64,000 bases of DNA from Podarcis vaucheri (taxonomy: Eukaryota), in assembly GCA_965113315.1 (NCBI GenBank), contig OZ220363.1. One strand, written 5' to 3'. The translations under genes were made by a program, and so were the position numbers. Positions 1 through 39,070 of the stretch are shown here, one piece after another. The notes below the pieces were generated by a model, which did not search any database, was not told where the DNA came from, and saw only the letters and a list, made by a program, of their open reading frames with translations. The first letter of the stretch is position 1. Every line of letters starts with the position of its first letter.

Positions 1-216
1 TTTCCCTCGGGCCCCTAGCCCTTTCCTTCGGGCTTACCTTTTTTTCCCCGCTGCGGATTCCCTCTTCCGGCCTCTTTTCTCCCTCGACCAGGTGTCTCCA
101 CTCCAGGACGGTGTGGCAATCTCCCCCTACAAACTGGCAGGGTGTGCACTGGAAATGCGAACGCCGATCTGAGCTGTTCACCTGAGGTCGAGCCTGGCTC
201 TCCTCGGTGGGGCGAT
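1..216 (-). mobile_element. ERV 5' leader, continuing off the window edge, with putative major splice donor
   Basis: GC-rich sequence directly after the PBS; AG|GTAAGC on the minus strand at about 32-39, as in gammaretroviral leaders. Confidence 0.65.
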
Positions 217-234
217 TTCCCGGCCAACGCACCA
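217..234 (-). promoter_or_regulatory. Retroviral primer-binding site, tRNA-Gly(TCC)
   Basis: Minus strand reads TGGTGCGTTGGCCGGGAA, complementary to the 3' 18 nt of vertebrate tRNA-Gly(TCC) (...TTCCCGGCCAACGCACCA). Confidence 0.85.
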
Positions 235-240
235 AAAATC

Positions 241-822
241 TGAAGCCTTATTGCACCAGGGAATCATTTTGCCCGTGTCCCCAGGACCGAAGAAAGAGTA
301 AAATAGCACCAGGAAAGTTTCTTCTTTGGAGAAAAGAGTTTAATCTGTGCACAGAGACAACCAGCAGAATATAGTTTCTGAAATCTGGCTGCAAAGTAAT
401 ACACATCAGCAAACTTTCTTATACCTGAAAGCATTCACCCACCTCTCAGACCTCCCCCAAAACTTCCCCAATCAGCTGGCAAGTTTTCACTTATTCCCTT
501 TTAGGGCATATCTATATTGCAGGCTAAGCACTGCTGGCTAAGCACTTCCTCCTCTTACCCCTGTGTGCCTTTCTGCTGGCTAAGCACTCCCTCCCCTCTC
601 CTTCGTACACGTGTCTTTTTGCTAGCTAAGCAGCCCCTTGTACGTGTCTTTCTTCTTCTTGCGTTACTAAAGCAGAAGCGCAAGGCAGGAAATGGGCCCT
701 CAGCCTGTCTGGTCAAATTTAGCTTGCATCTGTGGGTCTAGCTAGCTGCTTAACCACAATTGCAGAAGTAAGTTTAATGCAGAAACTCACTATGTGCAGA
801 TAATATGAAGATTAACCCTTCA
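241..822 (-). mobile_element. 5' LTR of an endogenous retrovirus (gamma/ERV1-like), antisense to NAV2
   Basis: On the minus strand it starts TGAAG (822) and ends CTTCA (241), a terminal inverted repeat. It has U3 direct repeats (GCTAAGCA-core, about 522-632), a CCAAT box (468-472), TATAAGAA (416-423) and an ATTAAA polyA signal (339-344), and is followed after 6 nt by a tRNA PBS. Confidence 0.8.
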
Positions 823-1591
823 ATTTAAAGTTTCTTTAATCAATAATAACAGTAGACCACCATCAGTTCACACTGGAGATACAGTGCTATTATTAGTACT
901 TTTGTAAATTATTATTATGTTGAGAGGGGCTTCTCATCTGCCTCTTTTTTCCTTATTAAATTTGTGAATAAAAACTTTGCTTTTATTTGCTTCATCAGTA
1001 TTTGTTTCATCAATATTTCTAAGCTAATCTATATATTCATTGGAGAAAGTACTATTAACCAGCTTCGTTATCTCCAGAAAGGTTTTTTGGTGTTCTTTAC
1101 CACTATAAATAAATTTGCATCTGATATATGAAAGAAAAGTATAACTGTGGAAACAGATATCTGTACTGGCCTCTCTTGTGAACTGTACACATTATTGTCA
1201 TTTGCCAATGAGAACTCTGAAATACTTTAATTGATCTTGAAAAGCCAGTGACCCTTTCTGGACAACTGCCAGATCATCAGTGAAATTGATTTTGGACTGT
1301 GCCAAATTCCCTGTAGCATTGAATCCAAGTGTGTTAGCTGGACAAGGGAGGAGGGGTGAGAGGGGAATGATGATAAATTTTCAGAAACTGAACGGGATTA
1401 ACAGCAGTTTGCTCAGCTGTCAAAACTAAGTAGAGGTTTTTAGGTAGAGATCGTTTTAGTTGTTGGTGAATGCTGCATTAGTGCATGCAGAGGGAAACTA
1501 GCAGCAGCAATTATAGAGCGAAATAGTTTGGCTCAAACACTCCAAAGCAGTAAGTTAAATATGTTTAGCTTCCTTCATGATAAAAGGATGA

Positions 1592-1673
1592 ATGCTTTAC
1601 TATTTCATACACTTTGAAAACGGTTGGCGATTTACTTTGATCTTTCTCGGTGTTTACTTCTTAAAGTGCTGTG
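1592..1673 (+). CDS. NAV2: Candidate alternative first coding exon of NAV2 (MLYYFIHFENGWRFTLIFLGVYFLKCC)
   Basis: ATG at 1592, 27 open codons plus G, then a GTG|GTAAGT donor. Phase 1 matches the acceptor at 11179 (G+AG = Glu). No expression evidence. Confidence 0.5.
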
Positions 1674-2382
1674 GTAAGTTTTTCATCTTATTATAAAAAT
1701 TTCACCATGCTTTCTGTTTTTAATGGGATTCTGCTTCCTAAATGCTTGCTTTTAGTATTAATATTTTTGCATTTTATTTATAAGGGTTTGTAGCCACAGA
1801 AACGCATGTTTAGTATCACAAAGCACTAAAAACCCAAGCTGAAAAATAATGCCAGCTAAACTGAAGCTTGAAAACCTCTCCTGCATTTTCAGTCAAGAAC
1901 ATGGAGTTTGAAACTATGGTGCAGCATCGAGTCCAGTGCTGGGTTTCTGTCTAGTAAAACTGTGCAGCAGCACCAGTGTGCATATCAGAGTTGCAGGCTT
2001 GCTTTTATGTGTCCATGTGCCGAATAACTGTCTAAAGTGCTATATCCCAGTTGGGTGCTAAGCAAGCATTACATTATCATACTTAGAAGTCGATATCACT
2101 GCAGCCCAATCACTGCAGAAGCTCCTGCTCTAAAAAAGTGAACACTATAGCGAATACAGCACAGTGAATAGGTCATAGCAATTTATAGAAAAATGGCATA
2201 GACAACATATTTATAAACTAGTGCGTTCAGTTCCTCTCCTCATTATGAAGCACACATTGGGATTCTTTTTTGTAATCATTACATTCCCAGTTTCTGTCCC
2301 ATTAGCCCAACTGAGCATAAAACACAGGCTGCAGAACAATTGCAGTAAGATAAATTCTGTTTGGGAAACTACAAACCCCTCT

Positions 2383-2722
2383 TATAGAATCATAGAATTG
2401 TAGAGTTGGAAGGCATCCCAAAGGTCATCTAGCCCAACCCCCCCGCTATGCGGGAATCTCGGCTAGATAATACATGACAGATGACCATCCAACCTCCGCT
2501 TAAAAACCTCCGAGGAAGGAGAATCCACCACCTTTGGAGGGTGCCTGCTCCACTGTTGAACAGCTCTTACCATCAGAAAGTTCTTCCTGGTGTTTAGTCG
2601 GAATCTTCTTTCTTGTAACCTGAGGCCACTGGTTTGCGTCCTAGCCTCCAGAGTAGGAGAATACAAGCTTGTTCCATCTTCCATGTCACAGACCTTTAGA
2701 TATTTGAAGATGGCTGCCCTGT
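2383..2722 (-). mobile_element. CR1 LINE 3' fragment
   Basis: ATTCTATG-type tail on the minus strand; ORF 2463-2771 encodes a CR1 RT C-terminus (FKYLK...RFRLNTRKNFL.VRAVQQW...SPS.EVFKRRLD). Confidence 0.85.
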
Positions 2723-2843
2723 GACTAGTCTTTTGGATGCTTACTGAGATAGTTAGTCTCAGTAAGGACACCTAGTGTTTTAGATGGTGTTTAGCTGGGA
2801 GGGTGGACAGTTTTTGAAAAACTGTGATGAAATTGTTCGATGC

Positions 2844-2918
2844 TTTAGCTGAGATTCGTGCATTGCAGGGGGTTGGACTAGATGACCCTTTGGGTCCCTT
2901 CCAACTCTACAATTCTGT
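2844..2918 (+). mobile_element. CR1 LINE 3' UTR fragment
   Basis: GGGGTTGGACTAGATGACC...CCCTTCCAACTCTACAATTCT, the reverse complement of the tail at about 2390-2465. Confidence 0.8.
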
Positions 2919-3556
2919 AAAATATTTATTGGATAGGAGCAGCTGGCTAATGTTCTCCTTCCTCCATTATAGTCACTAGAATTAAGCAGTTGAGACAGGA
3001 ATGTGAATCTTGCCCTTTTTTGTTCAATTGTTTCTATTGATACTTCAGTTTTCTTATAGCCGTTATACTATTATTATTTGATGTGACTCATTAACATTAT
3101 CTTAAGAATACAACTGGCTTGTCTGAGTCAGTCTTGACAGCTTATTTATATTGGAGATGTGCCATGGGGCACAGTAAATCCAAGGCCCAATGCAGTTGGA
3201 GGACAAGATACAAGCAGGCCGTAAATCATGCTGTTTAATCTTATGTCTCTTTTAACAAGCTAAATTTGGCCCTTTTTTGGCATTTTGAAACATACCCAGT
3301 TCTTTTACTTAAACATAAAGAGGCTAAAGTTTCAATAGCAGCTGAAATAGTGAAAGCTTTGCCATACTTGGTATAAACTTGTTGAAATATTAGAGTAAAA
3401 TAAAACTATATTTAAATACACTTCAACGAACTGACAAGAGCCAAGGAATATAGTTGATGCAGGTTTCTTAATTCCCACCCTTTTAAAAAGGCCACAAAAC
3501 AGATTTAAAACTAAACCTTCATAATGGGACCCCACCTATGGGCCTTTTTAAAGGTC

Positions 3557-3830
3557 TAAGAACATAAGGAGAATTCTGCTGGATCAGGAGCCCATCTAGT
3601 CCATTATTCTGTTCTCACAGTGGCCAACCAGATGCCTGTGGAAACCTCACAAGCAGGACCTAAGTGCAACAGCTCTCTCACCATTTGTGATCCCTGATAG
3701 CTAGTATTCAGAAGCTGCTTCTGACATGCTGCTTCAAACAGTCAAGGTAGCATATAGCCATTATGGCTTGTAGGCATTTGCAGCCTCCACAAATTTGTCT
3801 ATTCTTGTTTAAAGCTATCCAAATTAGTGA
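3557..3830 (-). mobile_element. Old CR1-type 3' UTR fragment (second subfamily)
   Basis: AAGAACATAAG...GCTGGATCAG...CCATCTAGTCC...GTTCTCACAGTGGCCAACCAGATG; related copies at about 13600, 29490, 44728 and 60424. Confidence 0.65.
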
Positions 3831-5539
3831 AAAGCATGGTGGAATCCATGTAGGAAGCCTTGAAGAGTTCTTTATGGTGGTATCTTTACAGAGGGGCAGG
3901 AAATGGCCATCACTTTATTGCTCCCTGGAGTATTTCATTTCTAGTAATCCAATCCTGAAGTGACCAACTGGTGTGGAATAGGGATCTGGTCAGTGTTCTC
4001 CAGGAAAGGGCAGCAGAAGGCAACTCAGTCATACTATCACTTCCAGATCAGTAGTGGTCAGGTGACCCAAGGAACTATGAAGCTGCTGACTCTCTATGAC
4101 TCTATGAAGCAGCAATGGCACTCAAAATTTTATGTCCTACAGTGTGAGATACTTTGGTATTGAGCTATGGAAGAAGGTATGATTGCGTCCACGAGAGCAG
4201 AGAGGGATGTGTATAGAAGGAAACAACAGGAAGAAGAAGCTAGCTGAAGAATACTAAAAATAGAGGCTAACGCAGATGAATGTGTATGGAGGGATGTAAT
4301 AAGGATGTGTGTGGTTGAACACAGCAAAGAATGCAGGTGTAAGAACTGACAGAAAAGCAAAGTGTGGGTATTTGCTGGGTTGGTTGTATCTAGGAATAAA
4401 AGCTTTGTTAAACCCCTGCTGTTTTTAATATTTCAATGACATTTGAAGCAAACATTTTGATTACTCTTTTCTCTTTTTGCATTTGGATTATTATAGCATG
4501 CTTTCATTTCCTGGTTATTCTTCGGTGACAAAAATGTTGTCTAACTTGATTCCCATGACTGACAGGTTTCCATGATTGTTTCAAGTCTTTCTAGTGCCTT
4601 ATAGATTGTATGCCAGACCTCTCTCTGTGGAGTTTCATTAAAACATTCAGTCAGGGTCCAAGGAGAATCCGCCTTCCAAGGGCTCTTTGGAAGGCTCTGT
4701 CATCTCAAACCTGTCAGTGTTTGTTATTACAAATGACTTAAATCCTGAAAGACTACATGGAGGGGCAAGTCTTGTTCAGTTTTTAAAAGCACCTCACATC
4801 TTCTATTGTTGCATAATGGGATGGTAGGAGTGCCTCTAGCATTTCAAGTACTTATACAGTGTTTAAACAAAGACAATAAGAAATTGTAGTCACTTAAGGC
4901 CAGACAAGGAAATAAATATGCCTGTATTGTAGCGTTGTGGGGTTCCCTCCTCACCTTTCAAAGGTAGTTCTCACAGCCATTTCTTCTCTGTGTAATCACA
5001 GTTCTATTTTATTTATTGCATTTATATTCCCCCACCCCACCCATCCTCTTGGAAGCTCAGGGCTGCATCCTCCCCTCATTTTATTCTGTCAACAGTATTG
5101 TGAGGAAGGTTCAGCTATCACTGTGAGGCACTGAGTAGCCCAAGGACCCTGCAGAGCAGGGAGTTGACATCTGCTCTCCATGGTTGAAGTCCCATCTTCA
5201 GCACCACACTGTCTCTCAAGGGTATAGACAATATCGTATGACTAAAAACTCTCTGTTACTACTCAATGTCTTAAGCAAGTAAGCTACAGTAAGAGAGCAC
5301 AGGTTCAAGAGAGGTTGGGAAATATTTACTGTACAGTGGCAGTTCACATCTTTTCAATTTGGCAGATATCCCCAGCCATGGTGGTTCTTCTCGGAAGCAC
5401 AATGGGGTGACATATTTACTGAAACATAATATGAGTTTCTGCCTGTGATAATATATAGAGGGCCAGAATTATGTGTAGAAACAAGATGCTTTTTAGCGGT
5501 GGAAACAGCTTGGTGGAACAATGAAACGTTAATGAAATA

Positions 5540-6034
5540 CCGCATTTTTTGTCCCATAGGACGCTCCATCCCATAGGGCGCACCTAGTTTTTTTGGGGGG
5601 GGAAATAAAGGGGGGGAAATTTCCTTTATTTCCCCCCCAAAAAAACCAGGTCGGGGAACAGCAGGATGGCGGTGTTGCGCCTCCCCGCTGTCCCCCGAGT
5701 TTGTGGGGCTGGCAGATGTCTGCCCGGAACTCCCGCAGGACTCCCCACACTGCGGATGTCTGCCCGGCGCGCAGGGTGCTCTGCTTCAGGGTGCCCCGCG
5801 CGCCGGGTGGCAGGCTGCTATCCGCAGCCTAGGGAGCCCTGTGGGAACTCCTGCGGGCTCCCCAGGCTTGCGGATAGCTTCCTGAAGCCTGGAGAGCGAG
5901 AGGGGTCGGTGCGCACCGACCCCTCTCGCTCTCTAAGCTTCAGCGAAAGCCTGTATTCACCCCATAGGACGCACACAGATTTCCCCTTCATTTTTGGAGG
6001 GGAAAATGTGCGTCCTATAGGGAGAAAAATACGG
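5540..6034. mobile_element. Non-autonomous Tc1/mariner-pogo-type DNA transposon (MITE)
   Basis: TA TSDs (5538-39, 6035-36); imperfect 25-bp TIRs CCG(C/T)ATTTTT...ATAGGACGC; GC-rich interior with palindromes. Confidence 0.85.
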
Positions 6035-9000
6035 TAATTTAGCAAACAGTTAAAGTTTGCTTATTTATTAGTCAATTTAAAGTGTTTTTACCCTGCTTTT
6101 TAGCCAAAAGGATTTCCAAAGTGAATAAAATGAACAAATAAAAACAAGGGAGTCTCTTTTTTTTAACAGGCTTGCAGTGGAAAAGAAATCGCAGAGAAGC
6201 AAAAAAAAAAGGGGGGGTGAGGAGGAAGGAGGGAAACAAGCAGGCCCAAGGACCAATTCTTAACATATTAGTTCTTGATTCTCAGCTGGAATGGAAATGG
6301 TTGAGGGACAAAAGGAGCCAAATTAAGCTGGTCTCACAGCAGAGCTGATGGAACAGCCTTGCTTCACATTGTTCCCTGATGGAATGGCGACTATCAAGGG
6401 ATGTATAGTTTGGTGTAGTTCTCCTTTAGATCCAAGAGGGAAATGTGCTTCTTTATAGGTATTTTTGACTGACACATTTTGGGTTTCGTTTTCAGAACTG
6501 AACTATCAAAATAAATTAGGCCATAGATCCTTGAATAAATGTGTCCATCATTTACTGCCTTTTCAAAGTCTGTTTTGTCATTTAAATCTGTGATTCCGAT
6601 TGTCATTTTTGCTGTATTTTTGTTTAATTATTGTGCATTGTTTTTGCTTCTTACTGTAAGCCAACCAACCGCCTTGAGCAATAGGACAAAAGCCAGGGTG
6701 GAAATGTTGGGTGGCTATCTTTCCATCTACCTATCCAAATGTCCTTCAGTAAGTTGGAACCTCATGACTGATCCAGCTGACTGAATGTTCCCTTCTGCAG
6801 TGGCATTCGAAGTATGACTTTGACGTAGTAGCTACAGGGAGATCCTGAGGGAAGGTGGTGTTCATGCATCTCATTATGGTTCATCTAGGATCTCCATATT
6901 AAACTCTGGAGCTAAATCCAGGGGGCCGTGGGTGCTTTGGCACCCACAATACTATACATGTGGGGGCTGCCCCCCCAAAAAAATCAATGGGCAAAGTTGA
7001 AGCCCTTCCCCACTGTCCCCATCTCTTCAATGTGAGAGAGGAGGGGCTGCTGTGTCTGGCTCTGGTCAGTGAGGGAGGAGGAAGAAAAGGAGCCGCAACT
7101 GCTGGTTGGTGTGTGTGACATCACATGTACTACATGCAGGATGTTTGTGTGACATTACACATCTGCATTATGTCGCAGACACCCACAATCTTCAGTGCAA
7201 GATGGCACCTATGTTATTAAATGTTACTGCAGATGTAGCTAATCAGAAGCATGAATCAGTCATGCTTCTATTTCCCCCTGCCTGACCCAGATCTCTGTTG
7301 AAATACACTGCTTTTTTCTCTGAATTAGTAACATGACTACTGTATTTCCATCTCTGGGTATATTTATTTTTGTAGACTAAAATGTAAAGTTGTTGCTGAA
7401 GATTCCCTTTATGTGTTTTAACTAAGACCTGAACTATGTCATATGGTGTCTGGCTTCACACAATCTGCTGTGTGTGAATGAAATTGGCCCAGGTTACTTT
7501 ATGTGCACAACCCAGCAGGCTGTGAGTGGTGTTTGGCGAATAGACCAGATAGTCATATGCATTAAAGAATTGTTAAACTGTTCTAATTTTATTTTCTGCT
7601 GTATTTTCTTTAGTTTCTGCTTTCTTGTGTTGATAAATTCCAGACACCATTTAACTATATTTGCTTTATGAAAAATCTCTTATATTTATGTTTCTTTTTG
7701 GGTACTCACTGTGAGTCTGCCTAGAACTATGTTTGGTAATATTTAGAGGCATTTTTGGTTACTTCTAGCAAAGTTACATAGATAGTGAGAGAGCAGCTTG
7801 TGTTTGACAAATGATGGGAAATTGCATATATTTTCTGTGGCATTTATTATAGTGCAATCTCTCTAGCATTTCACAGAACAATTCAAACCATATGCATCTT
7901 CTCATTGCAAATGGTTAGGCTTGCGTTTGCAGTGAAGACATTACAGGAGCGGATGAAATCCAACCTAGCTGTACTGCAGTGTATATTGGCATTCAAACAT
8001 TCATCTGTGTAACAGAAACACTTGGAATTAAATAAACTCTAGGCACAGCACTTGTCTATGAAAGAGGCAAAGTGAGTGGTTATTCAGCCTAGCTGTATTT
8101 TGAATTTGAAGACATTTCATTTGTTGTCGATAAAAGTCAGCAATGGTTCTGCAAAAAGAATAGAGCTTCACAAAATAAGACAAATGGGATTTTAACTCAT
8201 CATAAAATCAGTTGAGTGTTCAGCAGGACAAAGTCAGAGCTAATTGAAATGAAACTTTCTTTAGGAAGTGAATTTTTTTATGATGTATTGTTGAGATAGG
8301 GCCAAAACAATTTACCACACTGAGCAGCAAATTTTTTAAAGTAAAAACTGACCAAGAGATGGAGGCAGGCATGTGGTAAAGTCCTCAGGCAAGTGCATCT
8401 TCTTCCAGAAACTCCATATTGGGAGCTGATGCTGAGCAAGACAAGTCCATCCATAACAAAGTTGTGGCTTAAAGTTTCCCATATTCCGCTCTCTGACCAC
8501 TAGAAGTTTCTTCAGAGAATAAAACATAATGTATACATAAAAGCAATCCCCATTAGGTTTTATGATGAGGTGATACAATTCTCATCATACAGATACAGAT
8601 ATAACAGGTTTAAGGATGAGGGCATTGTTTATTTTTAATTGAGAAGGCAATGTGTGATGGCTGCAGTTTATAGTTGTGAGGAAAAGGAAGACTAGAGAAG
8701 ATAAAATAATAGTGGGAGATGGGAGAAGAGGATAAGAATTGAGAGTAAGTAGGGAGAGAGAAAATGAGGATCAGGGAATGGTACAGGAGACAACAAGTTA
8801 TGGGTGGGGTGGATGAAGAATAGCTTTGCACAGTTCAGGGCTACTTAATAAATTACAAAAAAGTTTCCAAAAACCTCTCCTTTAAATACCACAGCAGCTT
8901 TTGCAAATAAATTTTACAAATTTACAAGTGAACAGGAACTTTTACTAGCCTGCTGCTCATTCATTGCTAGATGTTGAGAGGACCGAAAAGCATTTAGCCC

Positions 9001-9154
9001 TACCTAGATTTGATTCTTTCTTATCAGAGGCAACTACATGAAAAACATAGTAAGAATGAATCTTTTACTGAAACATATCAATAAATCCTTAGTGGCTTAA
9101 AGGCTTAATTGACACTTCGGCATTAAGACAGATCTGAGGTCTGTGCACATACTA

Positions 9155-9427
9155 CAGTGGTACCTCGCAAGACGAAAAACGCGGAAGACGAAAGAGTTTT
9201 CCGTTTTTTGAGTCGTTCCGCAAGATGAATTTCCCTATGGGCTTGCTTCGCAAGACGAAACATCCTGCGAGTTCTTGCGAGTTTGTTTCCTTTTTCTTAA
9301 AGCCGCTAAGCCGTTAATAGCCGCTAAGCCGTTAATAGCCGCTAATAGCCGTGCTTCGCAAGACGAAAAAACCTCAAGACGAAGAGACTCGCGGAACGGA
9401 TTAATTTCGTCTTGCGAGGCACCACTG
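9155..9427. mobile_element. Tigger/pogo-like MITE
   Basis: TA TSDs; TIRs CAGTGGT(A/G)CCTCGCAAGACGAA matching at 21/22; internal AGCCG(C/T)TAA tandem repeats. Confidence 0.9.
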
Positions 9428-10217
9428 TACATTGGTTTACAGTCAATGGTACCCTTGAGCTCTGCCTTTTTAGGTGCATTTAGCATAACTTGTGAAAGAG
9501 CCCATATGGGTTGACGATTCACCAATTTAATGTGTGTGCTAATTAATCCATGAAAGGCTCTTCTCCCTGCATCTGGGTCTGTTAATAAAATTTCTCCTGC
9601 GCCATGCCTTTCTGTGGCTCCTGGCATAACGCTTTCTGGGGAGGAAACTGCAGCAGAGACCGTCCAGTTTTAACGGGTTGTGGTTAATAATCCAACACGC
9701 TGGAAATCTTCCCACATCCTAGCAATGCCTTCTTCCTATAAAACAAGCGTACACATCTGCTCTTCTAGTTAGGACGTAACAGTGTGAAATGACCATGGGC
9801 TTATTACAAGAGGGTTCTCCTGGAAATTCACATCCCTGCTACGTAAGGAAGATGGGTGTGCTTGGAAATTTGAGGTGGTCTGGTATGGATCATGCGAGGG
9901 AGGTTAACAGAGCTTTATCTTCAGTGAGCAGCCAAAAGTGAAGCAAAACAGCCTCTGTGTGGCTGCAGCAGCAGTTAGTGATTCACAGAACAGCATTCAC
10001 AGTTTCCCCCCACAAACTGCTGCAAACATTCACTCTCAGCCGTTGTTTATTTTTAAGTTCAAATTTTTTCTTTTTTTCTTTTTATAAAAAAACCAGCTTG
10101 AGAAGCGCTATATGCCGTTTATTGCTAGAGGATCTGGGACGGCAGGTAAAAGCCGTTAATCCCCAGCAAGCTCCTGGGCAGACTAACAGTCAGAGATGAC
10201 AAAAGTTAATTGGAAAC

Positions 10218-10321
10218 ATGAGCAGCATAACAGAAGACATATTTGCAGTAATTGGGATGTAATGTCTCCAGAAGAGAGAGTTTGCAAAGAGTAACTTTAA
10301 AAAAGAAGTGGCTCTCAAGAG
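10218..10321 (+). other. NAV2: Candidate alternative first exon of NAV2 with a 1-nt frameshift or UUG start (…GCNVSRRESLQRVTLKKKWLSR)
   Basis: Frame open from TTG 10252 to an AG|GTGGGT donor (10321/10322) in phase 1, in frame with exon 11179. Removing 1 nt at about 10252-10256 links it to ATG 10218. Confidence 0.35.
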
Positions 10322-11178
10322 GTGGGTAAGCAAGTGTGGTTCTTATGCTCTCGTATTCATTGAATGAGACGCTTTCAAACAGACAGAATCAATAAGAGAT
10401 TTGGACTTGCCAAGGAAGCATTTTCAGCTAGCTCTTTTTACTCCAGCTGGTTTCAATTATGAGATAAAGATGTATCGTTTATTGTTGCTGCGTGAGTAAG
10501 GATATGATGAGTTTCGGTTTTGTGGATTTGGGTTTGATTCAGTGTTTTACTGGACTAGAAACTGAGCTTGCAGTTATCAGAAGGATCTTCTGATAGAGTG
10601 TGCATGTGTGTGTTGTGCTGTTTGATCCATGTTACAGTTGGATTTTTGCCAAGTCGCAAACTTCAGCAGAGCTAATTCTGCTCAGTATAAAGCAGACAGT
10701 TTGGGTTATAAAGTTTTAATATTTTTTGATTTTCTAATAGTATGCTGTTAGTGTCTGATCAGGATACTCTGACACACACTGACCATGTGCATTTATTTGA
10801 ATGTAATTGCTGTTAGGTAACATCTAAAATACATTATTCTCTATTATTTGGTAAGCAACTAAAGGTAGACAAGGTGATTCATAGCAATAAGAACAGAAGG
10901 TCCCTGCCAGAAGGCTTAAAAAACACACAACTTAATAATTTTAATTGTTGATGATTTGATCGTGCTATTATTTTATTGCCCCCCCGACCAAAACAAAAAT
11001 AAAACAGATTTTGTTTTGAATGACATAGTGTTGTGTACAGGTCATATAAAACGTTACCTCAGTATTTCGTAGCTGCTGTTAGATGTCAGCATTTTGTGAA
11101 AGCAAGCTGTGTTCACCTGAAGACTTTCCAAAAATCATGGCATCATGATTTTCTTTTCTTTTTGTTTTCTGTCTCCAG

Positions 11179-12292
11179 AGCCAGCAGACAATTTAGCCTC
11201 TCAGCCCACAGGAATGAATGAAAATGCACCACCTTCAACCCAAAGCAGCAGTAGCAACAACATTGCCGGTTGCAATAACTCCTCAGCCATCCCCCAGCCC
11301 AACTCTGCCGTTAAACCCTGGCGCAGCAAGTCACTCAGTGCCAAGCACACAGCTACGTCTTCCATATTATCAGTAAAACAACAGGTCCAGGAACCTCCGA
11401 AATCCTCTCCAGAGATGGTCAAACCAACTCCCAACGGTCAGAAATCCATGCTGGAAAAGCTGAAGCTTTTTAATACAAAAGGAGGCTCCAAAGCAGGAGG
11501 GTCATCCCTTGAATGTCCGGGGTCTCGGGACACTAGTTGTGAAAGGCTAGAGGCCCTCCCTAGCTTTGAGGAAAGTGAAGAGATTGAAGCTGCGAATCGG
11601 AACGCAAACAACCCCCCATCAAACAGTCCCAAAATTGCACTCAAGGGAATTGCACAAAGAACGTTCAGTCGGGCACTGACCAATAAGAAGAGTTCCCCAA
11701 AGGGCAATGAGAAAGAAAAAGAGAAGCAGAAGGATAAAGAAAAGGAAAAGAGCAAAGACGTTGCCAAGAGAATATCCGTAACCGAGAAAGCAGATGTGAA
11801 AGAGGAGCTGAAAGAAGAACAGATCCCACCAGCTACAACCGAGATGCCAAAAAAATCCTCCAAGATCGCAAGCTTTATCCCTAAAGGAGGAAAGCTAAAC
11901 AGTGCCAAGAAGGAGGCACCTGCCCCTTCGCACAGTGGAATACCAAAACCAGGGTTGAAAACCGCCACAGGGAAATCCTCAAGTGCCCCAAGCTGTTCGG
12001 CAAAGGATGGCGAGAGAAGCCGCAGTGGGAAGCCTGCCTCAGGCCTCTCTCATCAGAAGCCCCAGCTGGACGGCAGGAATTCCAGTTCCACGTCAAGTTT
12101 GGCCTCCTCTGAAGGGAGAGGCATTGGAGGGGTGCCTGCTCTGAGTACTAGTAGCAGTACCCAGGCTGTCAATGGGCCCACAGGCAGTACCACACAGACC
12201 ACAGGAAGCAATACTGTGAGTGTTCAGCTACCTCATCCGCAACAGCAATACAGCCACCCGAATACTGCCACAGTAGCACCATTCATGTACAG
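11179..12292 (+). CDS. NAV2: Neuron navigator 2, large internal Ser/Pro/Lys-rich exon (1114 bp, phase 1-2)
   Basis: Pyrimidine tract plus CAG acceptor; AG|GTAGGA donor. Peptides KPWRSKSLS, QKSMLEKLKLFN, KIALKGIAQRTFSRALTNKK, KIASFIPKGGK and HPNTATVAPFMYR are recognisable NAV2 sequence. Confidence 0.97.
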
Positions 12293-12543
12293 GTAGGAGA
12301 ACCTTTTTAAGCAGGGTGTGTCAAGTCTGACTTGCTTAGCGTAGTCTGCTTCTTCTGTGGCATGCTTTCTCTAGAAGTAGGAAAAAACCTACAATAACAA
12401 CTTGAGTTTGGTTTCCACCCCAAACAAGCGTTCCAGATCCTAATAAGCAGCAGACTTGTGGTGTGCGTAGGACAGAGCTTCTTTTTATTTGTGTCTCGAG
12501 TTAACAGTGAAAGCGACACAAAAGAAGAAATACAACTGTAGTA

Positions 12544-19210: not shown

Positions 19211-20423
19211 CTTTTCAAGCAGTAACTGTAGAAAATGATTGAAAAATAGTGTACAATGTTTCTTGTTAATCAAAGAAAGGCTGCTCCCAGTAACAAATAT
19301 AAAATCTGGAAGAATACTTGGATCTTACTGCAAGAAACCTTAAAACACTGCCTTGGGACCAGAGTGGTCCTTCCATTTTCAAAAGGGCTGGCAATATAGT
19401 GAAGGCAATTTCCTCCCATCCTTTCTCTGCATCTTCCAGGATCACCTACCACACAGGTCTGGAGGGTCCTTCAATATTCCAGCGCAGATTTTCAGGGGAC
19501 ATAGGGCACTGCAGATGGGGAAATGAAATCAAACATAAAATTCATTCGCAATATCACTGAATCCAGGCCATTGTATACACTTAATCCAATTTTTTGATGA
19601 TCAAATTAGCATTTCAGCTAACTGTTAAAGGAAGCTAATAAAACCACAAGAATGTGACATTCTGTGATTTGCAGCTGTTAAATCACCCAGCACACCATAT
19701 TATAACATTAGGAATCCAAGCTCCCTTTTCAACCTCCAAGGAAAAAATGCAATAGCCTAAATTGTATTTTTAAAGTATTTCTTGTCTTGAGAGGTGTAAA
19801 GCTTTCACTTAGTCACAGTGATGAAGCATGTGTTGCTCAAATATGTTCCCTGTAGGATTCCTTCAGCAAGGATGAAGATTTTTAATTAAGTGCCTACCTC
19901 CATATTCACAGTACATGCAAATATATTTCTGTCCTTTCAGTGTTGTAGGTCATAGAGGTCTTAACACAAAACAAGGCTGCAGGTTAAAATTGGAATGAGG
20001 GAGACCAGAATAGTGAATATTAACTTAACCCTTAGGTTTTTGGTTTTTTTAAGAGTTAGACTAGAGTTCAATGTATCTAAGCATAATTTCAGCAGAAGAG
20101 GTTTGAAATGAATCCAGTATTTTAAAAATACAATTGTGTTTCTATTAAATCCCTTTATAACAGGCATGGGAAACCTCCTTCCCAAAGGCCTAATTAGGCC
20201 TTCCAAGCAGCCCCATTTGGCCCAAAAGGGGGTTTGCAAGACATTTTGGAGTCCCAACTATCAGCTGATAGGGTCTTCAAAGTGTAGCACATTGCAAGTA
20301 CAAACCATCAGCTGTATTTGTAACAATGGGGGGGCTTGTTATTCACTACAAATGCAATGCATTTTGATTAAAAGTTTCCCTGTTTTAATTTATTTCATAA
20401 TTTTGATTTCTTATTCTTTCAAG

Positions 20424-20813
20424 CACCTTGGAGACCACCTTTGATACCAATGTCACCACTGAAATAAGCGGACGCAGTATTCTCAGTATGACCGGAAGGC
20501 CAACACCCTTATCATGGAGACTTGGGCAGTCTAGTCCCCGCCTTCAGGCAGGTGATGCTCCATCAGTGGGCAATGGATATCCTCCAAGAGCCAATGCCAG
20601 CCGGTTCATCAATGCAGAATCAGGGCGTTATATGTATTCAGCTCCCTTAAGAAGACAGCTAGCATCGCGGGGCAGTAACGTTTGTCATGTGGATATCAAT
20701 GACAAAGGAGGTGATGAAATAGATCTTGAAGGAATCAACATGGATGCCACGGGTTACATGAGTGATGGAGACGTTCTGGGGAAAAATATAAGGACTGATG
20801 ATATTACAAGTGG
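20424..20813 (+). CDS. NAV2: NAV2 internal exon (390 bp, phase 2-2): TLETTFDTNVTTE...GYMSDGD...DDITSG
   Basis: AAG acceptor, GG|GTGAGT donor; SPRLQAGDAPS and GYMSDGD navigator motifs. Confidence 0.97.
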
Positions 20814-21263
20814 GTGAGTACATTCAAGTTTACTGATATAATAATAATATTATTAATAATAATTGTATAATCTTCCTTTGAGCCAGAATTGGCTCACAGA
20901 GCATTTTATAACCATTACAATACTTTATGAAAATACGTAGTATTAAAGATACATGGACGTGTGTGTTTATGGTAGCTTCAACTGGTTCCATGAAGCTGAT
21001 GATCCAAGTCTAGATGTTAGGCTCTTCCCTACAGGAGAAGGGAGGGGCAAGAAGAACTGCAGGTGGCCATAAAGGCATCAGGACTAATAAATTATCAGAT
21101 GTACTTTGTTTGCTTGACACAGGATGCAGATGTTCAAGCACTTCCATAAGAATGTAGATTTTGTTCCTGTTATGCATGCCTGATGCAGACACTTTTATAG
21201 TGATATGTCTCTTAAGAACACTACAGTCTATTACAAGGATCTGTAAAGCAGTTGGTTGAGTTA

Positions 21264-33550: not shown

Positions 33551-34265
33551 CTTCCTTTTACATTGGATTACAAACCAACTACTCGTGAGTAAGATTTACT
33601 CAAAATTGGATTACAAATTTATGAATTTGGCTGAAAGCGGGAGGCGAGAAAAAGGAAGTCCGTCTCCCGAGGATGCTAGTGATCAAAAGCAAAGATTTGA
33701 CAAGCTGGAAGCAGTGCGGAGAGATTTTAAAGTGAGACATCATACGTTCGGAAAAGTCGGAAACTGAAGCAGGCAAGTTACTTTTATTTCCTTGCTATTT
33801 TCTGTACCTTATTTGGGGACTTTCTCCTCTGCTGGACTTTTCTAAATTCTAAAGACTTTAAAACCCCCAGTCCCGGACTTGCAGTGGGACAAAAGGCTAG
33901 TTTGCGGATACACTTATAAATTTGAAATGGACACTTAGAGGCATTACTGTTGGATACAATTAAACAACTGTACTTTGCACCTTTTAAGAAACTTATGGCA
34001 ACACTGTGAGAGCTTTGCTAGAGGGAAAAGGTCTTTTCCAAGGATCATCGTTAATTTACTTAACTTAAGGAACTTTAATGGCGTCTGAAATTTTGTTTCT
34101 CCTTCCCTGAATTGCAACATTACTCCCTCTAGTGGAACTTGGGACTTACAATTTCCTGAGAACCAACTTTGCTTTGTCTTTCTGTGGTTAGATTGTTTAC
34201 GCTTGCGCCTGCCTTTCTCATGAAACTTTTGACAGTCTGACCTTGAATCCAAAGACAGGTGTGGA

Positions 34266-35312
34266 ATGAGCGACAGGGTAAAAACAAGAGCTGCGTCGAA
34301 GGCAGGGAAAGGCAAACTGACACAAACAACCCTGTTTTCTCAGGGACGTAGATCTTCAGTCCCTGCTGTTTTACAGACTGCACCCTCGCCAATAACACCA
34401 GCTGAAGAAGCTGAACAACCAATAGGTGAGGATATGGCATCTGGAGGATCTAACACTCTTTTAGAGGAAATGTTACAACAATTCGCAATTTTGAACAAAA
34501 AAGTGGATGATCAAACTGCAAAAATTGACTTAGCCACATCTTCAATTACCAAACTTTCGGAACAGGTGGCCAAGCATTCACAAGATATTGGAAACTTAAA
34601 CGACGCAACATCTGAAAATCGAAAATTGGCGGAGGCTGCGATTGGAAAAGCAGAGGCCGCAGCCAAAGGAGTGGAGGAACTGAAAGGAGAGGTAAGACCG
34701 CTCCACAAACATATTACAGACCAGCAGGCCTACCTGTCTTTGGTGGAACTGCGAAACAGGGAAAATAACCTGAGATTACGCTCTATCCCAGAGATTGAGA
34801 AAGAGGATTTGACCGGCTTTTTAACGGCAGAATTTTCCAAATTCTGGGGTATAAACCAAGACACAGATTTCAAAATAACGACTGCATTTAGATTGGGAAG
34901 AGTCGTTGGGAAGGACAGGCCTAGAGACTGTTTGATTATTTTAAGGACTAAACAGGAGAGAGACAAGCTACTTGATTTACACTTCAATAAAGCACTTGTG
35001 ATCCAGGATAGAAGAGCACAAATTTACAAAGATATCCCTAAACAATTACTGGATCTAAGAGCCAACTACACTGACCTAACTGGACTTTTGAGAGGTAACG
35101 GAATACCTTACAGGTGGGAGTTCCCACAAGGCGTCTTATTTAAATACAAAGGAAAGAAGATAAAAATCAAAACGAAAGAGGATTGCCAGAAGTTCCTACA
35201 CGACCACGGAGAAGACCTACAGAAAGGAGCAGCTATTTGGCCACCACCAGAGTCAGGGAAAGAGTTACCACCTTCGGACTCGGACAAAAAAGAGGACACC
35301 CCACAAGAGTAA
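34266..35312 (+). CDS. L1 ORF1p (348 aa), coiled-coil/RRM/CTD RNA-binding protein
   Basis: Heptad-rich centre, ELRNRENNLRLRSIPE (RRM entry), PRDCLI, YRWEFP C-terminal motif; lies just upstream of ORF2. Confidence 0.92.
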   Translation: MSDRVKTRAASKAGKGKLTQTTLFSQGRRSSVPAVLQTAPSPITPAEEAEQPIGEDMASGGSNTLLEEMLQQFAILNKKVDDQTAKIDLATSSITKLSEQVAKHSQDIGNLNDATSENRKLAEAAIGKAEAAAKGVEELKGEVRPLHKHITDQQAYLSLVELRNRENNLRLRSIPEIEKEDLTGFLTAEFSKFWGINQDTDFKITTAFRLGRVVGKDRPRDCLIILRTKQERDKLLDLHFNKALVIQDRRAQIYKDIPKQLLDLRANYTDLTGLLRGNGIPYRWEFPQGVLFKYKGKKIKIKTKEDCQKFLHDHGEDLQKGAAIWPPPESGKELPPSDSDKKEDTPQE

Positions 35313-35329
35313 CAACAGATTGATACAAG

Positions 35330-38300
35330 ATGTCTCTGCAGCTGTATAGTTGGAACATTAATGGCGCGAATTCCCCAGAAAAACGCAAACGGATCTTCCA
35401 TATCCTAAAGAAAGAGAATTTGGATATAATTTGTTTGCAAGAAACCCATGTGACAAGGGTGCACAGGAAGGTGTTAACAAATAAAAGATTAGGCCAAGAA
35501 TTCATCTCATCAGACAGAGTTAAGAAGAGAGGCGTGGTGATTTACGCCAAAGAGACTCTTTCACCGAAACTTTTGTTTAAAGATGAACAAGGAAGAATCC
35601 TGGCTATTGAGATTTCGACCCAAGGAGAGAAAATTTTGATATTAGGAATTTATGCACCAAACGAGGGGAAATCAGAATTTTATAAGAAGCTGCATGAGAC
35701 ATTATTGGACTATCTGGACTATTCTAACATCATTATGATGGGAGACATGAATGGGGTTGTCTCTACTTTTATGGATAAGTCACAGAACCAGAATTTGACT
35801 AAAGATGGAAGACTACCAAAAACTTTCTTTGAACTAACTGACAATATGGATTTAATTGACTCATGGAGGACGAGAAACCCCCTAGGTAAAGAAGGAACTT
35901 TCTTTTCTGAGGCCCACCTGTCATGGACAAGGATCGACCAAATTTGGACAACTAGAGGGCTGGCACCTAAGACCACAAAAATAGAAATCTGCCCAAAGAC
36001 TTGCTCCGACCATAACGCTCTGAAAATGGAAATGAGATTTACTACTGCCGACTCCTTCAGATGGAAAATGAATGACAACCTGCTAAGAGATCAAGAGATT
36101 GTAAAGAAGGCCCAAAAAGCTTTAAAGGACTATTTTGAAATCAACTTGAACACCTCGGTGGAAAAAAGAACAATCTGGGACGCGAGCAAAGCTGTTATGA
36201 GAGGGTTTCTGATACAACAGAATACGATTAAGAAAAAACTCTGGAATGGTAAAAAGGACAAGATATTGGAGAAGATAAGAGACGGCGAGAAAAAATTAAG
36301 ATTAAACCCAAAATCCAAAGAGACCTTAAGAGAAATTAAATTCCACCAGTCACAATATGCGCAACTGATTAACCAAGAAGTGGAATGGAGAATTAAACAA
36401 ATGAAACAAAGATCATTTGAATCGGCGAATAAATGTGGGAAACTGCTAGCTTGGCAGTTGAAAAAGAGACAAAAATTAAACTACGTTACCAATCTAGAAG
36501 TTGAAGGAAAGAACATTCAGAAACCGGGAGAAATTAGAAAGTGTTTCCAGAAATACTTTAAAAAGCTGTATACACAAGGACCCGAGGATGTAACCGAGAT
36601 AGAACAATTTTTGAAAGAAAATGGTCTTCCAGAAATATCTCAAGAGAAGAGATCAACCTTGAATTGTAAAATAACACAACAGGAAATCGAGGATGCCATT
36701 CAGAATATGCAGCTGGGCAAATCTCCAGGACCTGATGGACTTACCTCCAAGTATTATAGGACGTTAAAAGACTATTTGATACAACCATTAGAGGAGGTTT
36801 GTAACCAGATTATGGGGGGAGGGAAGGCACCAGATACGTGGAAAGAAGCATTCATCACATTGATACCTAAAGTGGAAACTGAAAAGACTCAACTTAAGAA
36901 CTACCGTCCCATCTCACTCCTAAATGTGGATTATAAAATATTTGCGGATATTCTGGCCAACAGATTTAAAAAAGTATTAAATGAGATAATCCATAAAGAC
37001 CAGGCCGGCTTTCTCCCAGGCAGACATTTGTTTGACAATACCAGGAACATTATTGATATCTTGGAACTTTTACAAACAAATATTAACACCAAAGCAGTAT
37101 TGATCTTTATTGATGCGGAGAAGGCCTTTGATAACATTTCCTGGAAATTTATGAAGAAAAATTTGGAAGGGATGGGAGTGGGAAGGGGGTTTGAGAATGG
37201 AATAGAAGCAATCTATTCAGAACAAAAAGCTAAGTTGATAGTGAACAATGTGGTGACAGAAGAACTTCATATTGAAAAAGGAACACGACAGGGGTGCCCC
37301 CTATCCCCCTTATTGTTTATTTCAGTCCTGGAGGTTTTGCTGAACATGATAAGGGAGGATCGGCAGGTACAAGGAATACGGGTCGGAGCGAAACAATATA
37401 AACTGAAAGTATTTGCAGATGACCTGGTTTTAACACTACAGGAGCCAGAACCCAGTACAAAAAGAGTTTTAGAACTGATCCAGAAATTTGGTCGGGTGGC
37501 GGGTTTTAAGTTGAACAAGCAAAAAACTAAAGTCTTAGGGAAAAACTTGACGGCCATGGAAACAGAAGGGTTTCAGAAAGAGACAGAACTAAATATTGTT
37601 AAGAAAGTGAAATACCTGGGGGTCAATCTGTCTTCCAAGAATTTGAATCTATTTAAAGATAATTATGAGAAATGTTGGTTAGAAGTTAAAAAAGATTTAG
37701 AAATTTGGTCAAGACTGAAATTATCCTTGTTAGGCCGAATTGCAGCTATAAAGATGAACGTTTTGCCAAAGATGTTGTTTTTGTTTCAAGCCTTGCAGAT
37801 TGTGGACAGAGTGGAATGCTTTGGAAAGTGGCAGAAGGACATTTCTAGGTTTGTCTGGCAGGGCAAAAAGCCCCGAATAAAGTTTAAGATATTAACTGAC
37901 GCAAAAGAGAGAGGGGGGTTTGCCCTGCCGGACCTAAGGTTATACTATGAAGCGGCAGCCTTCTGCTGGATGAAAGATTGGATTCTATTAGAAAACACTG
38001 ATGTCCTAGATCTGGAAGGCTTCAACAATTCGTTAGGTTGGCATGCGTACTTGTGGTATGACAAGGGTAAATCATATGGAATGTTTAAAAACCATATTGT
38101 CAGAAAAGCAATATATATGGTCTGGAAAAAATACAAAGACTTATTGGAAAGCAAAACTCCGAGGTGGATCTCACCAATAGAGGCCAAAGCTCGGAAAACA
38201 ACCAATATGGAGGCTTATTGGCCGAAATATTGGGAAATAATAGAAAATATTGAAGGTAACTGGAGATTGCAGAGCTTTGAAAAACTAAAGGATAAGGTGC

Positions 38301-39070
38301 AAAATTGGCTGCATTATGCCCAAATTAATGAGGTTTTTAAGCTAGACAAAAAAACAGGTTTCCAGGTGGAAAAATCGAAACTTGAGACAGAGTTGCTTGA
38401 ACCAAAGACCAAGTTATTATCGAGAATGTATAACTTGCTGCTTAAATGGAACACTCAAGATGAGATAGTTAAATCAGCAATGATAAAATGGGCTCAGGAC
38501 ATTGGTTATAATATTATGTCTGATGACTGGGAAAGGTTATGGACCACCGGTATGAAGTTTACTGCATGTAATGCTTTGAAAGAAAACATTATGAAAATGG
38601 TATACAGGTGGTACATGACCCCGGTTAAGCTAGCTAAGATTTACCATTTGTCCGATAACAAATGTTGGAAATGCAAGGAAGCTGAGGGAACATTCTTTCA
38701 CCTCTGGTGGACCTGCCCAAGACTGAAGGCCTTCTGGGAAATGATCTATAATGAGTTAAAAAAGGTGTTTAAGTACACTTTTCCCAAGAAACCAGAGGCC
38801 TTCCTTCTAGGCATTGTCGGCCAGAAGGTGTCTAAAAAGGATAGAACTTTTTTTATGTACGCTACAACAGCAGCAAGAATTCTTATCGCTAAGCATTGGA
38901 AGACCCAAGATTTGCCCACACTGGAGGACTGGCACACGCAACTGATGAACTACATGGAATTAGCCGAGATGACTGCAAGGATTCGAGACTTGGGAGAAGA
39001 AGCAATGGAGGAGGACTGGAAAAAATTTAAAGACTATTTGCAAAAGTATTATAAGTTATATGAAACATAA
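35330..39070 (+). CDS. L1 ORF2p (1246 aa): APE endonuclease, reverse transcriptase, CCHC zinc knuckle
   Basis: SWNING, LQETH, GDMN, RID, SDH (EN); KSPGPDG, YRPISLLN, DAEKAFD, GTRQGCPLSP, FADD, KYLG (RT); CWKC...HLWWTC. Confidence 0.97.
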   Translation: MSLQLYSWNINGANSPEKRKRIFHILKKENLDIICLQETHVTRVHRKVLTNKRLGQEFISSDRVKKRGVVIYAKETLSPKLLFKDEQGRILAIEISTQGEKILILGIYAPNEGKSEFYKKLHETLLDYLDYSNIIMMGDMNGVVSTFMDKSQNQNLTKDGRLPKTFFELTDNMDLIDSWRTRNPLGKEGTFFSEAHLSWTRIDQIWTTRGLAPKTTKIEICPKTCSDHNALKMEMRFTTADSFRWKMNDNLLRDQEIVKKAQKALKDYFEINLNTSVEKRTIWDASKAVMRGFLIQQNTIKKKLWNGKKDKILEKIRDGEKKLRLNPKSKETLREIKFHQSQYAQLINQEVEWRIKQMKQRSFESANKCGKLLAWQLKKRQKLNYVTNLEVEGKNIQKPGEIRKCFQKYFKKLYTQGPEDVTEIEQFLKENGLPEISQEKRSTLNCKITQQEIEDAIQNMQLGKSPGPDGLTSKYYRTLKDYLIQPLEEVCNQIMGGGKAPDTWKEAFITLIPKVETEKTQLKNYRPISLLNVDYKIFADILANRFKKVLNEIIHKDQAGFLPGRHLFDNTRNIIDILELLQTNINTKAVLIFIDAEKAFDNISWKFMKKNLEGMGVGRGFENGIEAIYSEQKAKLIVNNVVTEELHIEKGTRQGCPLSPLLFISVLEVLLNMIREDRQVQGIRVGAKQYKLKVFADDLVLTLQEPEPSTKRVLELIQKFGRVAGFKLNKQKTKVLGKNLTAMETEGFQKETELNIVKKVKYLGVNLSSKNLNLFKDNYEKCWLEVKKDLEIWSRLKLSLLGRIAAIKMNVLPKMLFLFQALQIVDRVECFGKWQKDISRFVWQGKKPRIKFKILTDAKERGGFALPDLRLYYEAAAFCWMKDWILLENTDVLDLEGFNNSLGWHAYLWYDKGKSYGMFKNHIVRKAIYMVWKKYKDLLESKTPRWISPIEAKARKTTNMEAYWPKYWEIIENIEGNWRLQSFEKLKDKVQNWLHYAQINEVFKLDKKTGFQVEKSKLETELLEPKTKLLSRMYNLLLKWNTQDEIVKSAMIKWAQDIGYNIMSDDWERLWTTGMKFTACNALKENIMKMVYRWYMTPVKLAKIYHLSDNKCWKCKEAEGTFFHLWWTCPRLKAFWEMIYNELKKVFKYTFPKKPEAFLLGIVGQKVSKKDRTFFMYATTAARILIAKHWKTQDLPTLEDWHTQLMNYMELAEMTARIRDLGEEAMEEDWKKFKDYLQKYYKLYET

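What the first reader, a model, noticed from the sequence alone, without database searches (positions are those of the whole stretch)
1592..1679. Candidate alternative NAV2 start exon encoding a hydrophobic, Cys-Cys-ended leader
Seen: in a TE-poor stretch, ATG 1592 opens MLYYFIHFENGWRFTLIFLGVYFLKCC and ends at a strong GTG|GTAAGT donor in phase 1, the phase required by the acceptor at 11179 (giving ...KCC-E-PADNL). Known: canonical NAV2 begins with a calponin-homology domain encoded upstream of this window, and Cys pairs next to hydrophobic segments are typical S-palmitoylation sites. Inference: an internal promoter (about 1240-1590) makes a CH-less, membrane-associated NAV2 that keeps the SxIP motifs and downstream domains. 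An out-of-frame uATG at 1588 may dampen translation.
Basis: partly seen in the sequence, partly recalled or inferred. Interest (0 to 1): 0.8.

Follow-up and report, generated by a model that had tools for sequence, protein, structure and literature searches.

The report
Lizard NAV2 alternative first exon, already annotated
The short reading frame is most likely a real alternative first exon of the lizard NAV2 gene, because NCBI already annotates the same exon in a related lizard, but its hydrophobic leader changes fast, loses the Cys pair, and shows no sign of being a conserved membrane anchor.

Summary
The letters are as described. ATG 1592 opens 27 codons, followed by one G, a GTAAGT donor in phase 1, and a matching NAV2 acceptor at 11179.

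On sequence alone this is not beyond chance: about 0.2 to 1.8 such sites are expected in this intron. Two RNA runs gave no reads, but there was no positive control.

The protein databases changed my reading. The window is a lacertid lizard: its NAV2 exon is 99.2% identical to Podarcis. RefSeq isoform X7 of Zootoca vivipara (XP_034973219.2, 2151 aa) begins MLYCFIHLENGGRFTLVFLGVYFLKCYE|PADNL. That is the same leader (22 of 27 residues), joined to the same exon, without the CH domain.

So the structural inference of an alternative first exon giving a CH-less NAV2 is supported, and it is already in public annotation.

The functional inference is not supported:
- The Cys pair is not kept (CC becomes CY).
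- The leader has 5 changes in 27 residues against 5 in 370 in the next exon (p = 2e-4).
- The hydrophobic core is only 11 residues.
- The ATG has a poor context and overlaps a better upstream ATG.

Other RefSeq CH-less isoforms start at a conserved in-exon Met (MNEN, 11214). This transcript may make that protein too. The finding is ordinary and of low novelty.

The parts
1592..1673 (+). Coding part of the alternative first exon: ATG, 27 codons (MLYYFIHFENGWRFTLIFLGVYFLKCC) and the first base of the split codon GAG (E).
   Evidence: The orthologous leader MLYCFIHLENGGRFTLVFLGVYFLKCY+E starts Zootoca vivipara NAV2 isoform X7.
1674..1679 (+). Splice donor GTAAGT, phase 1.
   Evidence: It scores 9.6 bits with my rough matrix and is among the 3 best of 629 GT sites in 1-11178.
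1588..1617 (+). Overlapping upstream ORF (MNALLFHTL, then stop). Its ATG has A at -3, a better context than ATG 1592.
   Evidence: After its stop, the next ATG in the exon pair is the in-frame MNEN ATG at 11214.
1240..1591 (+). Proposed promoter and 5' untranslated stretch. This part is unverified.
   Evidence: It holds seven upstream ATGs. It has no TATA-like hexamer, a CpG observed/expected ratio of 0.37 and GC of 0.37-0.41. No reads were laid on it.
11179..12292 (+). Constitutive NAV2 exon that the leader joins (E-PADNL ... ATVAPFMY-R). The acceptor is in phase 1 and the donor at 12293 is in phase 2.
   Evidence: It is 99.2% identical to Podarcis muralis and P. lilfordi NAV2, and 98.6% identical to Zootoca.
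11214..11216 (+). In-exon, in-frame ATG (MNEN...) with G at -3. RefSeq CH-less isoforms of several reptiles and a bird use it as their start.
   Evidence: The isoforms are P0349, P0355, P0365, P0391, P0392 and P0164.
11871..11945 (+). SxIP motifs SFIP (11871-11882) and SGIP (11934-11945), which the CH-less isoform keeps.

Best explanation
This is a real alternative first exon of NAV2, restricted to a lizard lineage and used from an internal promoter in the long intron after the CH-domain exons. It splices from 1673 to the acceptor at 11179 and gives a CH-less navigator-2. That protein keeps the SxIP motifs, the coiled coils and the AAA+ module.

Shown: the exon's letters, and its ortholog at the head of a RefSeq isoform in a sister genus.

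Inferred: that it is transcribed in this species.

The 27-residue leader is probably a young, weakly constrained or unconstrained by-product of where the exon happens to start, not a targeting device. Ribosomes that start at the better-placed ATG 1588 read a 9-codon ORF. They can then start again at the next ATG of the message, the conserved in-frame MNEN Met at 11214. Other CH-less NAV2 isoforms use that Met as their start.
For: - Letters, phase and acceptor are confirmed.
- The window is a lacertid: its exon is 99.2% identical to Podarcis NAV2.
- Zootoca vivipara isoform X7 (XP_034973219.2, 2151 aa) starts with the same leader, 22 of 27 residues identical, joined by E to PADNL.
- That isoform lacks PF00307 (CH) and keeps PF23092, AAA and PF25408.
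- By my own knowledge of the NCBI pipeline (Thibaud-Nissen et al. 2013, NCBI Handbook; not checked for this record), extra variants of a gene are kept only if transcript data support every exon pair.
- The leader has 5 changes in 27 residues against 5 in 370 in the next exon (p = 2e-4), and CC is not kept.
- An open frame would survive 5-8 neutral substitutions with probability about 0.4-0.6.
- ATG contexts and the upstream ORF were read. The next ATG after the upstream ORF is MNEN, in frame.
- MNEN-start RefSeq isoforms exist in Podarcis muralis, Lacerta agilis, Zootoca, two geckos and a cormorant.
Against: - There is no RNA evidence from this species. Two bulk RNA runs (about 1.9 Gb read from each) and two contig sets laid nothing on 800-2390, though without a positive control.
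- No RNA holder is on record.
- On sequence alone the site is within chance.
- I could not inspect the evidence behind the RefSeq model.
- Podarcis muralis, the closest annotated relative, appears to have no leader isoform in the annotation set seen here, going by the listed lengths of isoforms numbered up to X10; 13 cluster members were not listed.
- No promoter signal is recognisable.
Confidence: 0.7

Rival explanations
1. Chance ORF and donor in an intron. The ATG, the open frame and the strong donor are accidental. The Zootoca model is an annotation artefact that picked the same accident, kept because the two lizards are close. No such transcript is made in this species.
For: - The expected number of such sites in this intron is 0.2-1.8.
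- The hydrophobicity is ordinary for T-rich DNA.
- No reads were laid.
- The leader evolves as fast as neutral DNA would.
- The same reader proposed further start exons in this gene.
- Leaders in other reptile models (Varanus, Sphaerodactylus, Chelydra) are unrelated to each other and to this one.
Against: - The Zootoca isoform is one of nine or more RefSeq variants of the gene. By the pipeline's rules as I know them, such variants need transcript support for each junction.
- The ATG, the frame and the junction residue are all kept between the genera, and the donor is kept in the window.
Confidence: 0.22
2. The leader is a working membrane-targeting device: a hydrophobic segment plus S-palmitoylated Cys residues that ties a CH-less NAV2 to membranes.
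For: - The core RFTL(I/V)FLGVYFLKC is 13 of 14 identical between the window and Zootoca, and one Cys (C26) is kept.
- GRAVY is 0.90 in the window and 0.95 in Zootoca.
Against: - The Cys pair is not kept (C27 becomes Y).
- W12 becomes G and Y4 becomes C.
- The leader's rate of change is 13 times that of the next exon.
- The uncharged core is 11 residues.
- The start context is poor and the ATG overlaps an upstream ATG.
- No leader-like N-terminus occurs in any other of the 418 NAV proteins fetched, including geckos, iguanians, skinks, Varanus, turtles and birds.
- CH-less isoforms elsewhere simply start at MNEN.
Confidence: 0.06

Closest known systems
Zootoca vivipara neuron navigator 2 isoform X7 (RefSeq model XP_034973219.2)
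   Same: It has the same 27-residue leader (22 of 27 identical), the same junction residue E and the same next exon (98.6% identical). It has no CH domain and keeps all downstream navigator domains.
   Different: There are five substitutions (Y4C, F8L, W12G, I17V, C27Y), so the Cys pair of the window is a single Cys there. It is a predicted model in another genus, and nothing has been shown for the window's species.
CH-less short NAV2 / unc-53H2 transcripts of mammals, from an internal start
   Same: An internal start gives a navigator without the calponin-homology domain. In the Nav2 hypomorphic mouse the long CH-containing transcript is lost and a shorter transcript persists (PMC2843687, PMC9877351).
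   Different: The mammalian short form was proposed to start upstream of exon 13, much further downstream. The papers read here describe no hydrophobic leader for it.
RefSeq CH-less NAV2 isoforms that start at the in-exon Met MNEN
   Same: They use the same exon (11179 in the window) as their first coding exon, and the protein is the same from MNEN onward. Examples are Podarcis muralis X10, Lacerta agilis X11, Zootoca X9, Paroedura X8, Sphaerodactylus X6 and Phalacrocorax X3.
   Different: Their 5' exons add no residues. The exon studied here adds 28 residues upstream plus the 11 residues PADNLASQPTG.
N-terminal dual-acylation or Cys-rich palmitoylation leaders (GAP-43 and SH4-type)
   Same: Cys residues lie next to a hydrophobic or basic N-terminal stretch.
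   Different: There is no Gly2. The Cys residues lie at positions 26-27 and not near the N-terminus, and the pair is not conserved.

Membership tests
Alternative first exon of NAV2 (internal promoter, CH-less isoform) | An ATG-initiated open frame ends at a GT donor whose phase matches the downstream acceptor. | tested here: met
   ATG 1592, 27 codons plus G, GTAAGT, phase 1. The acceptor at 11179 is in phase 1.
Alternative first exon of NAV2 (internal promoter, CH-less isoform) | The orthologous exon is present and used in a related species. | tested here: met
   Zootoca vivipara isoform X7 starts with the orthologous leader joined to the same exon. The evidence behind that model could not be inspected.
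Alternative first exon of NAV2 (internal promoter, CH-less isoform) | Transcripts in this species cross the junction 1673 to 11179. | tested here: inconclusive
   laid no reads or contigs on 800-2390 from 2 RNA runs and 2 contig sets, without a positive control. The 6-kb limit kept both junction sides out of one call.
Alternative first exon of NAV2 (internal promoter, CH-less isoform) | The product lacks the CH domain and keeps the downstream navigator domains. | tested here: met
   Pfam scan of the Zootoca ortholog finds no PF00307, while PF23092, AAA and PF25408 are present. The full-length Podarcis isoform has PF00307. SxIP motifs lie in the window's exon.
Alternative first exon of NAV2 (internal promoter, CH-less isoform) | A promoter and transcription start lie shortly upstream. 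| not testable with these tools
   There is no TATA box and no CpG island. No CAGE data or read starts are available.
Palmitoylated or membrane-anchoring N-terminal leader | The acylated Cys residues are conserved among orthologs. | tested here: not met
   CC in the window, CY in Zootoca.
Palmitoylated or membrane-anchoring N-terminal leader | The hydrophobic segment is long enough to span or firmly enter a membrane (about 18-20 residues for a span). | tested here: not met
   The uncharged core FTLIFLGVYFL is 11 residues between R13 and K25. No dedicated predictor was available.
Palmitoylated or membrane-anchoring N-terminal leader | The leader is under purifying selection. | tested here: not met
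   5 changes in 27 residues against 5 in 370 in the next exon, p = 2e-4. The open frame survives neutral change with probability about 0.4-0.6. No nucleotide sequence of the ortholog was available, so dN/dS was not computed.
Palmitoylated or membrane-anchoring N-terminal leader | Acylation and membrane localisation are shown by experiment. | not testable with these tools
   This needs acyl-exchange chemistry and localisation of fusion proteins.

The most novel reading that the evidence does not exclude
Lacertid lizards have gained a new N-terminal hydrophobic leader on a CH-less navigator-2. The leader is translated and attaches this microtubule plus-end protein to membranes. It would be a young, lineage-specific change of targeting, made by a new first exon.
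Probability: 0.06. Interest if true: 0.5.

Novelty: already known. Interest (0 to 1): 0.25.

Why it matters
The scan's exon-finding logic therefore worked here.

Biologically it adds little. CH-less NAV2 forms from internal starts are known in mammals and are predicted in many reptiles and birds. The leader looks like a young, weakly constrained add-on. It is a small example of how a new first exon can put an arbitrary peptide on a large conserved protein.

Tried and rejected
- **Chance model.** It made me rate the exon as about 75% accidental. The orthologous RefSeq isoform later overruled that.
- **RNA test.** No RNA holder is on record and nothing was laid.
- **First searches.** The representative search and first word search gave only fish, turtle and bird proteins. 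A turtle model has an unrelated 23-residue leader and a cormorant isoform starts at MNEN. The word search with the exon alone gave genomic ORF calls and ab initio fragments. The Varanus (51 aa) and Sphaerodactylus (33 aa) leaders are unrelated to the candidate and have no match in the window.
- **Flanking DNA.** No nucleotide comparison with other squamates was therefore possible.
- **Rfam on 1-12500.** Nothing lies near the exon. The only hits are sub-threshold hairpins in a transposon at 5580-6030.
- **GC-rich 5550-6010.** I considered it as a CpG-island promoter and rejected that, because it has inverted ends and a palindrome typical of a transposon.
- **Joined model.** Exons were searched apart.

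Full report
**The observation.** ATG 1592 opens MLYYFIHFENGWRFTLIFLGVYFLKCC. One further G (1673) precedes GTAAGT (1674-1679), so the donor is in phase 1. A TGA sits in frame directly upstream (1589-1591). An out-of-frame ATG at 1588 opens a 9-codon ORF that stops at 1615-1617.

The acceptor at 11179 (tctccag|AG) opens a 1114-base NAV2 exon that runs to 12292. G+AG gives E, followed by PADNL. The exon holds the SxIP motifs SFIP and SGIP. The stretch 1100-1899 has no second copy in the window.

**Is it more than chance?** On sequence alone it is not. With a rough donor matrix of my own, the 11.2 kb before the acceptor hold 7 donors scoring 8 bits or more, and 3 scoring 9 or more. The candidate is the only one with a phase-1 ATG frame.

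Over both strands of the window (128 kb) there are 5 sites with a donor of 8 or more, phase 1 and an ATG frame of 27 codons or more. There are 20 such sites if any frame length is allowed. That gives 0.2 to 1.8 expected in this intron.

The exon is 44% T. One in ten stop-free 27-codon windows of the intron is as hydrophobic. The same reader also proposed other start exons in this gene. At this point I put the odds at three to one for an accident.

**RNA.** No run on record as RNA holds the stretch. I laid two bulk RNA-seq runs (about 1.9 Gb read from each) and two contig sets on 800-2390. Nothing mapped except a 42-base stray piece. The loose-ends table does print letters, so laying the acceptor side would have been the better single call.

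**Protein databases: the turning point.** A search with the exon at 11179 against cluster representatives, and a first word search, gave fish, turtle and bird navigators. A cormorant RefSeq isoform starts at the in-exon Met MNEN, and a snapping-turtle model has an unrelated 23-residue leader. A word search with the exon alone gave ab initio fragments from Varanus and Sphaerodactylus. Their leaders are unrelated to each other, to the candidate and to anything in the window.

A profile search dominated by squamate rows then reached squamate RefSeq proteins. The window's exon is 99.2% identical to Podarcis muralis and P. lilfordi NAV2. It is 98.6% identical to Zootoca vivipara and 98.4% to Lacerta agilis. 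The window is therefore a lacertid lizard near Podarcis.

Listing the two lacertid clusters brought up Zootoca vivipara 'neuron navigator 2 isoform X7' (XP_034973219.2, 2151 aa, P0362). Its N-terminus is MLYCFIHLENGGRFTLVFLGVYFLKCYE|PADNLASQ. This is the candidate leader: 22 of 27 residues identical, the same length, the same junction residue and the same next exon. The protein has no CH domain and keeps the navigator ubiquitin-like domain, the AAA domain and the lid.

Among the 418 navigator proteins fetched, no other shares even a 5-residue word with the leader.

**What the RefSeq model is worth.** The evidence behind it could not be inspected here. From my own knowledge of the NCBI pipeline (Thibaud-Nissen et al. 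2013, NCBI Handbook), additional variants of a gene are kept only if one long transcript, or RNA-seq of one sample, supports every exon pair. A paper read here shows only that isoform counts in these annotations follow the share of evidence-supported models (PMC12605758). I therefore take the exon as probably transcribed and spliced in Zootoca. By conservation of the ATG, frame and donor, I take it as probably used in the window's species too. Confidence is about 0.7.

**The leader peptide.** The five differences are Y4C, F8L, W12G, I17V and C27Y, each one base change away. The Cys pair that carried the palmitoylation idea is CC in the window and CY in Zootoca.

Five changes in 27 residues against five in 370 in the adjoining exon is a 13-fold difference (Fisher p = 2e-4). 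About 10% of single substitutions would destroy the ATG or create a stop. An open frame therefore survives 5-8 neutral substitutions with probability 0.4-0.6, and its survival in two genera says nothing for selection. The uncharged core is 11 residues, between R13 and K25, which is too short for a membrane span.

**Translation.** ATG 1592 has T at -3 and C at +4. The overlapping ATG 1588 has A at -3. Up to seven ATGs lie in the proposed 5' stretch. After the stop of the 1588 ORF, no ATG follows in the exon. The first ATG of the next exon is at 11214, in the NAV2 frame, with G at -3: the Met of MNEN.

RefSeq CH-less isoforms of Podarcis muralis (X10), Lacerta agilis (X11), Zootoca (X9, two accessions), Paroedura (X8), Sphaerodactylus (X6) and a cormorant (X3) all start at this Met. 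The transcript may thus yield the MNEN-start protein with or without some leader-bearing protein. This step is inference.

**Comparison with what is known.** Navigator-2 forms without the CH domain are known. [quoted passage not shown] RefSeq models in lacertids show several further N-termini, such as MQSRLPGP... and MQSSASPRD..., and shorter forms of about 1540 aa occur in Hemicordylus. The exon studied here is one more such start, restricted as far as seen to lacertids, and already present in public annotation. I rate it as already known and of low interest. The membrane reading keeps a probability of about 0.06.

**Limits.**
- No signal-peptide or membrane predictor was available.

Noticed in passing
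window 11214-11216: The in-exon Met of MNEN is the annotated start of CH-less NAV2 RefSeq isoforms in three lacertids, two geckos and a cormorant. A Met stands at the same place in the mammalian fragments seen (MSEN, MSDN). Their 5' exons must lie upstream and were not located.
   Followed up: partly
window 10218-10331: The same reader noted a second candidate start exon here (finding s1-848945). None of the fetched lacertid isoforms has an N-terminus that would fit a coding exon there, but non-coding 5' exons of the MNEN-start isoforms could lie anywhere in this intron.
   Followed up: no
window 5550-6030: A GC-rich block (GC 0.64) has inverted ends (cccataggacgc...) and a 31+31-base palindrome at 5882-5943. 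It looks like a small transposon, not a CpG island, and gives only sub-threshold microRNA-like hits.
   Followed up: partly
window 20420-20814 and the intron after it: Hemicordylus capensis RefSeq isoforms of about 1540-1580 aa start with short private leaders joined to YMTDGG..., the exon after the one that ends ...DDITSG at 20814. A further internal NAV2 start may therefore lie in the window's next intron, matching the short transcript described in mammals.
   Followed up: no
window 35324-39067: An open 1248-codon L1-type ORF2 lies in sense orientation inside a NAV2 intron, next to a 359-codon ORF at 34233-35309.
   Followed up: no
window 2394-2442 and 2868-2916: A 49-base inverted repeat, 90% complementary, with a motif (ggttggactagatgacc...cccttccaac) that looks like the ends of a common reptile interspersed repeat.
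   Followed up: no
P0003 (Acipenser sinensis model, 1935 aa): This sturgeon model joins a partial CH exon directly to the PADS... exon and skips the exons between. It may be a prediction artefact or an exon-skipping isoform.
   Followed up: no
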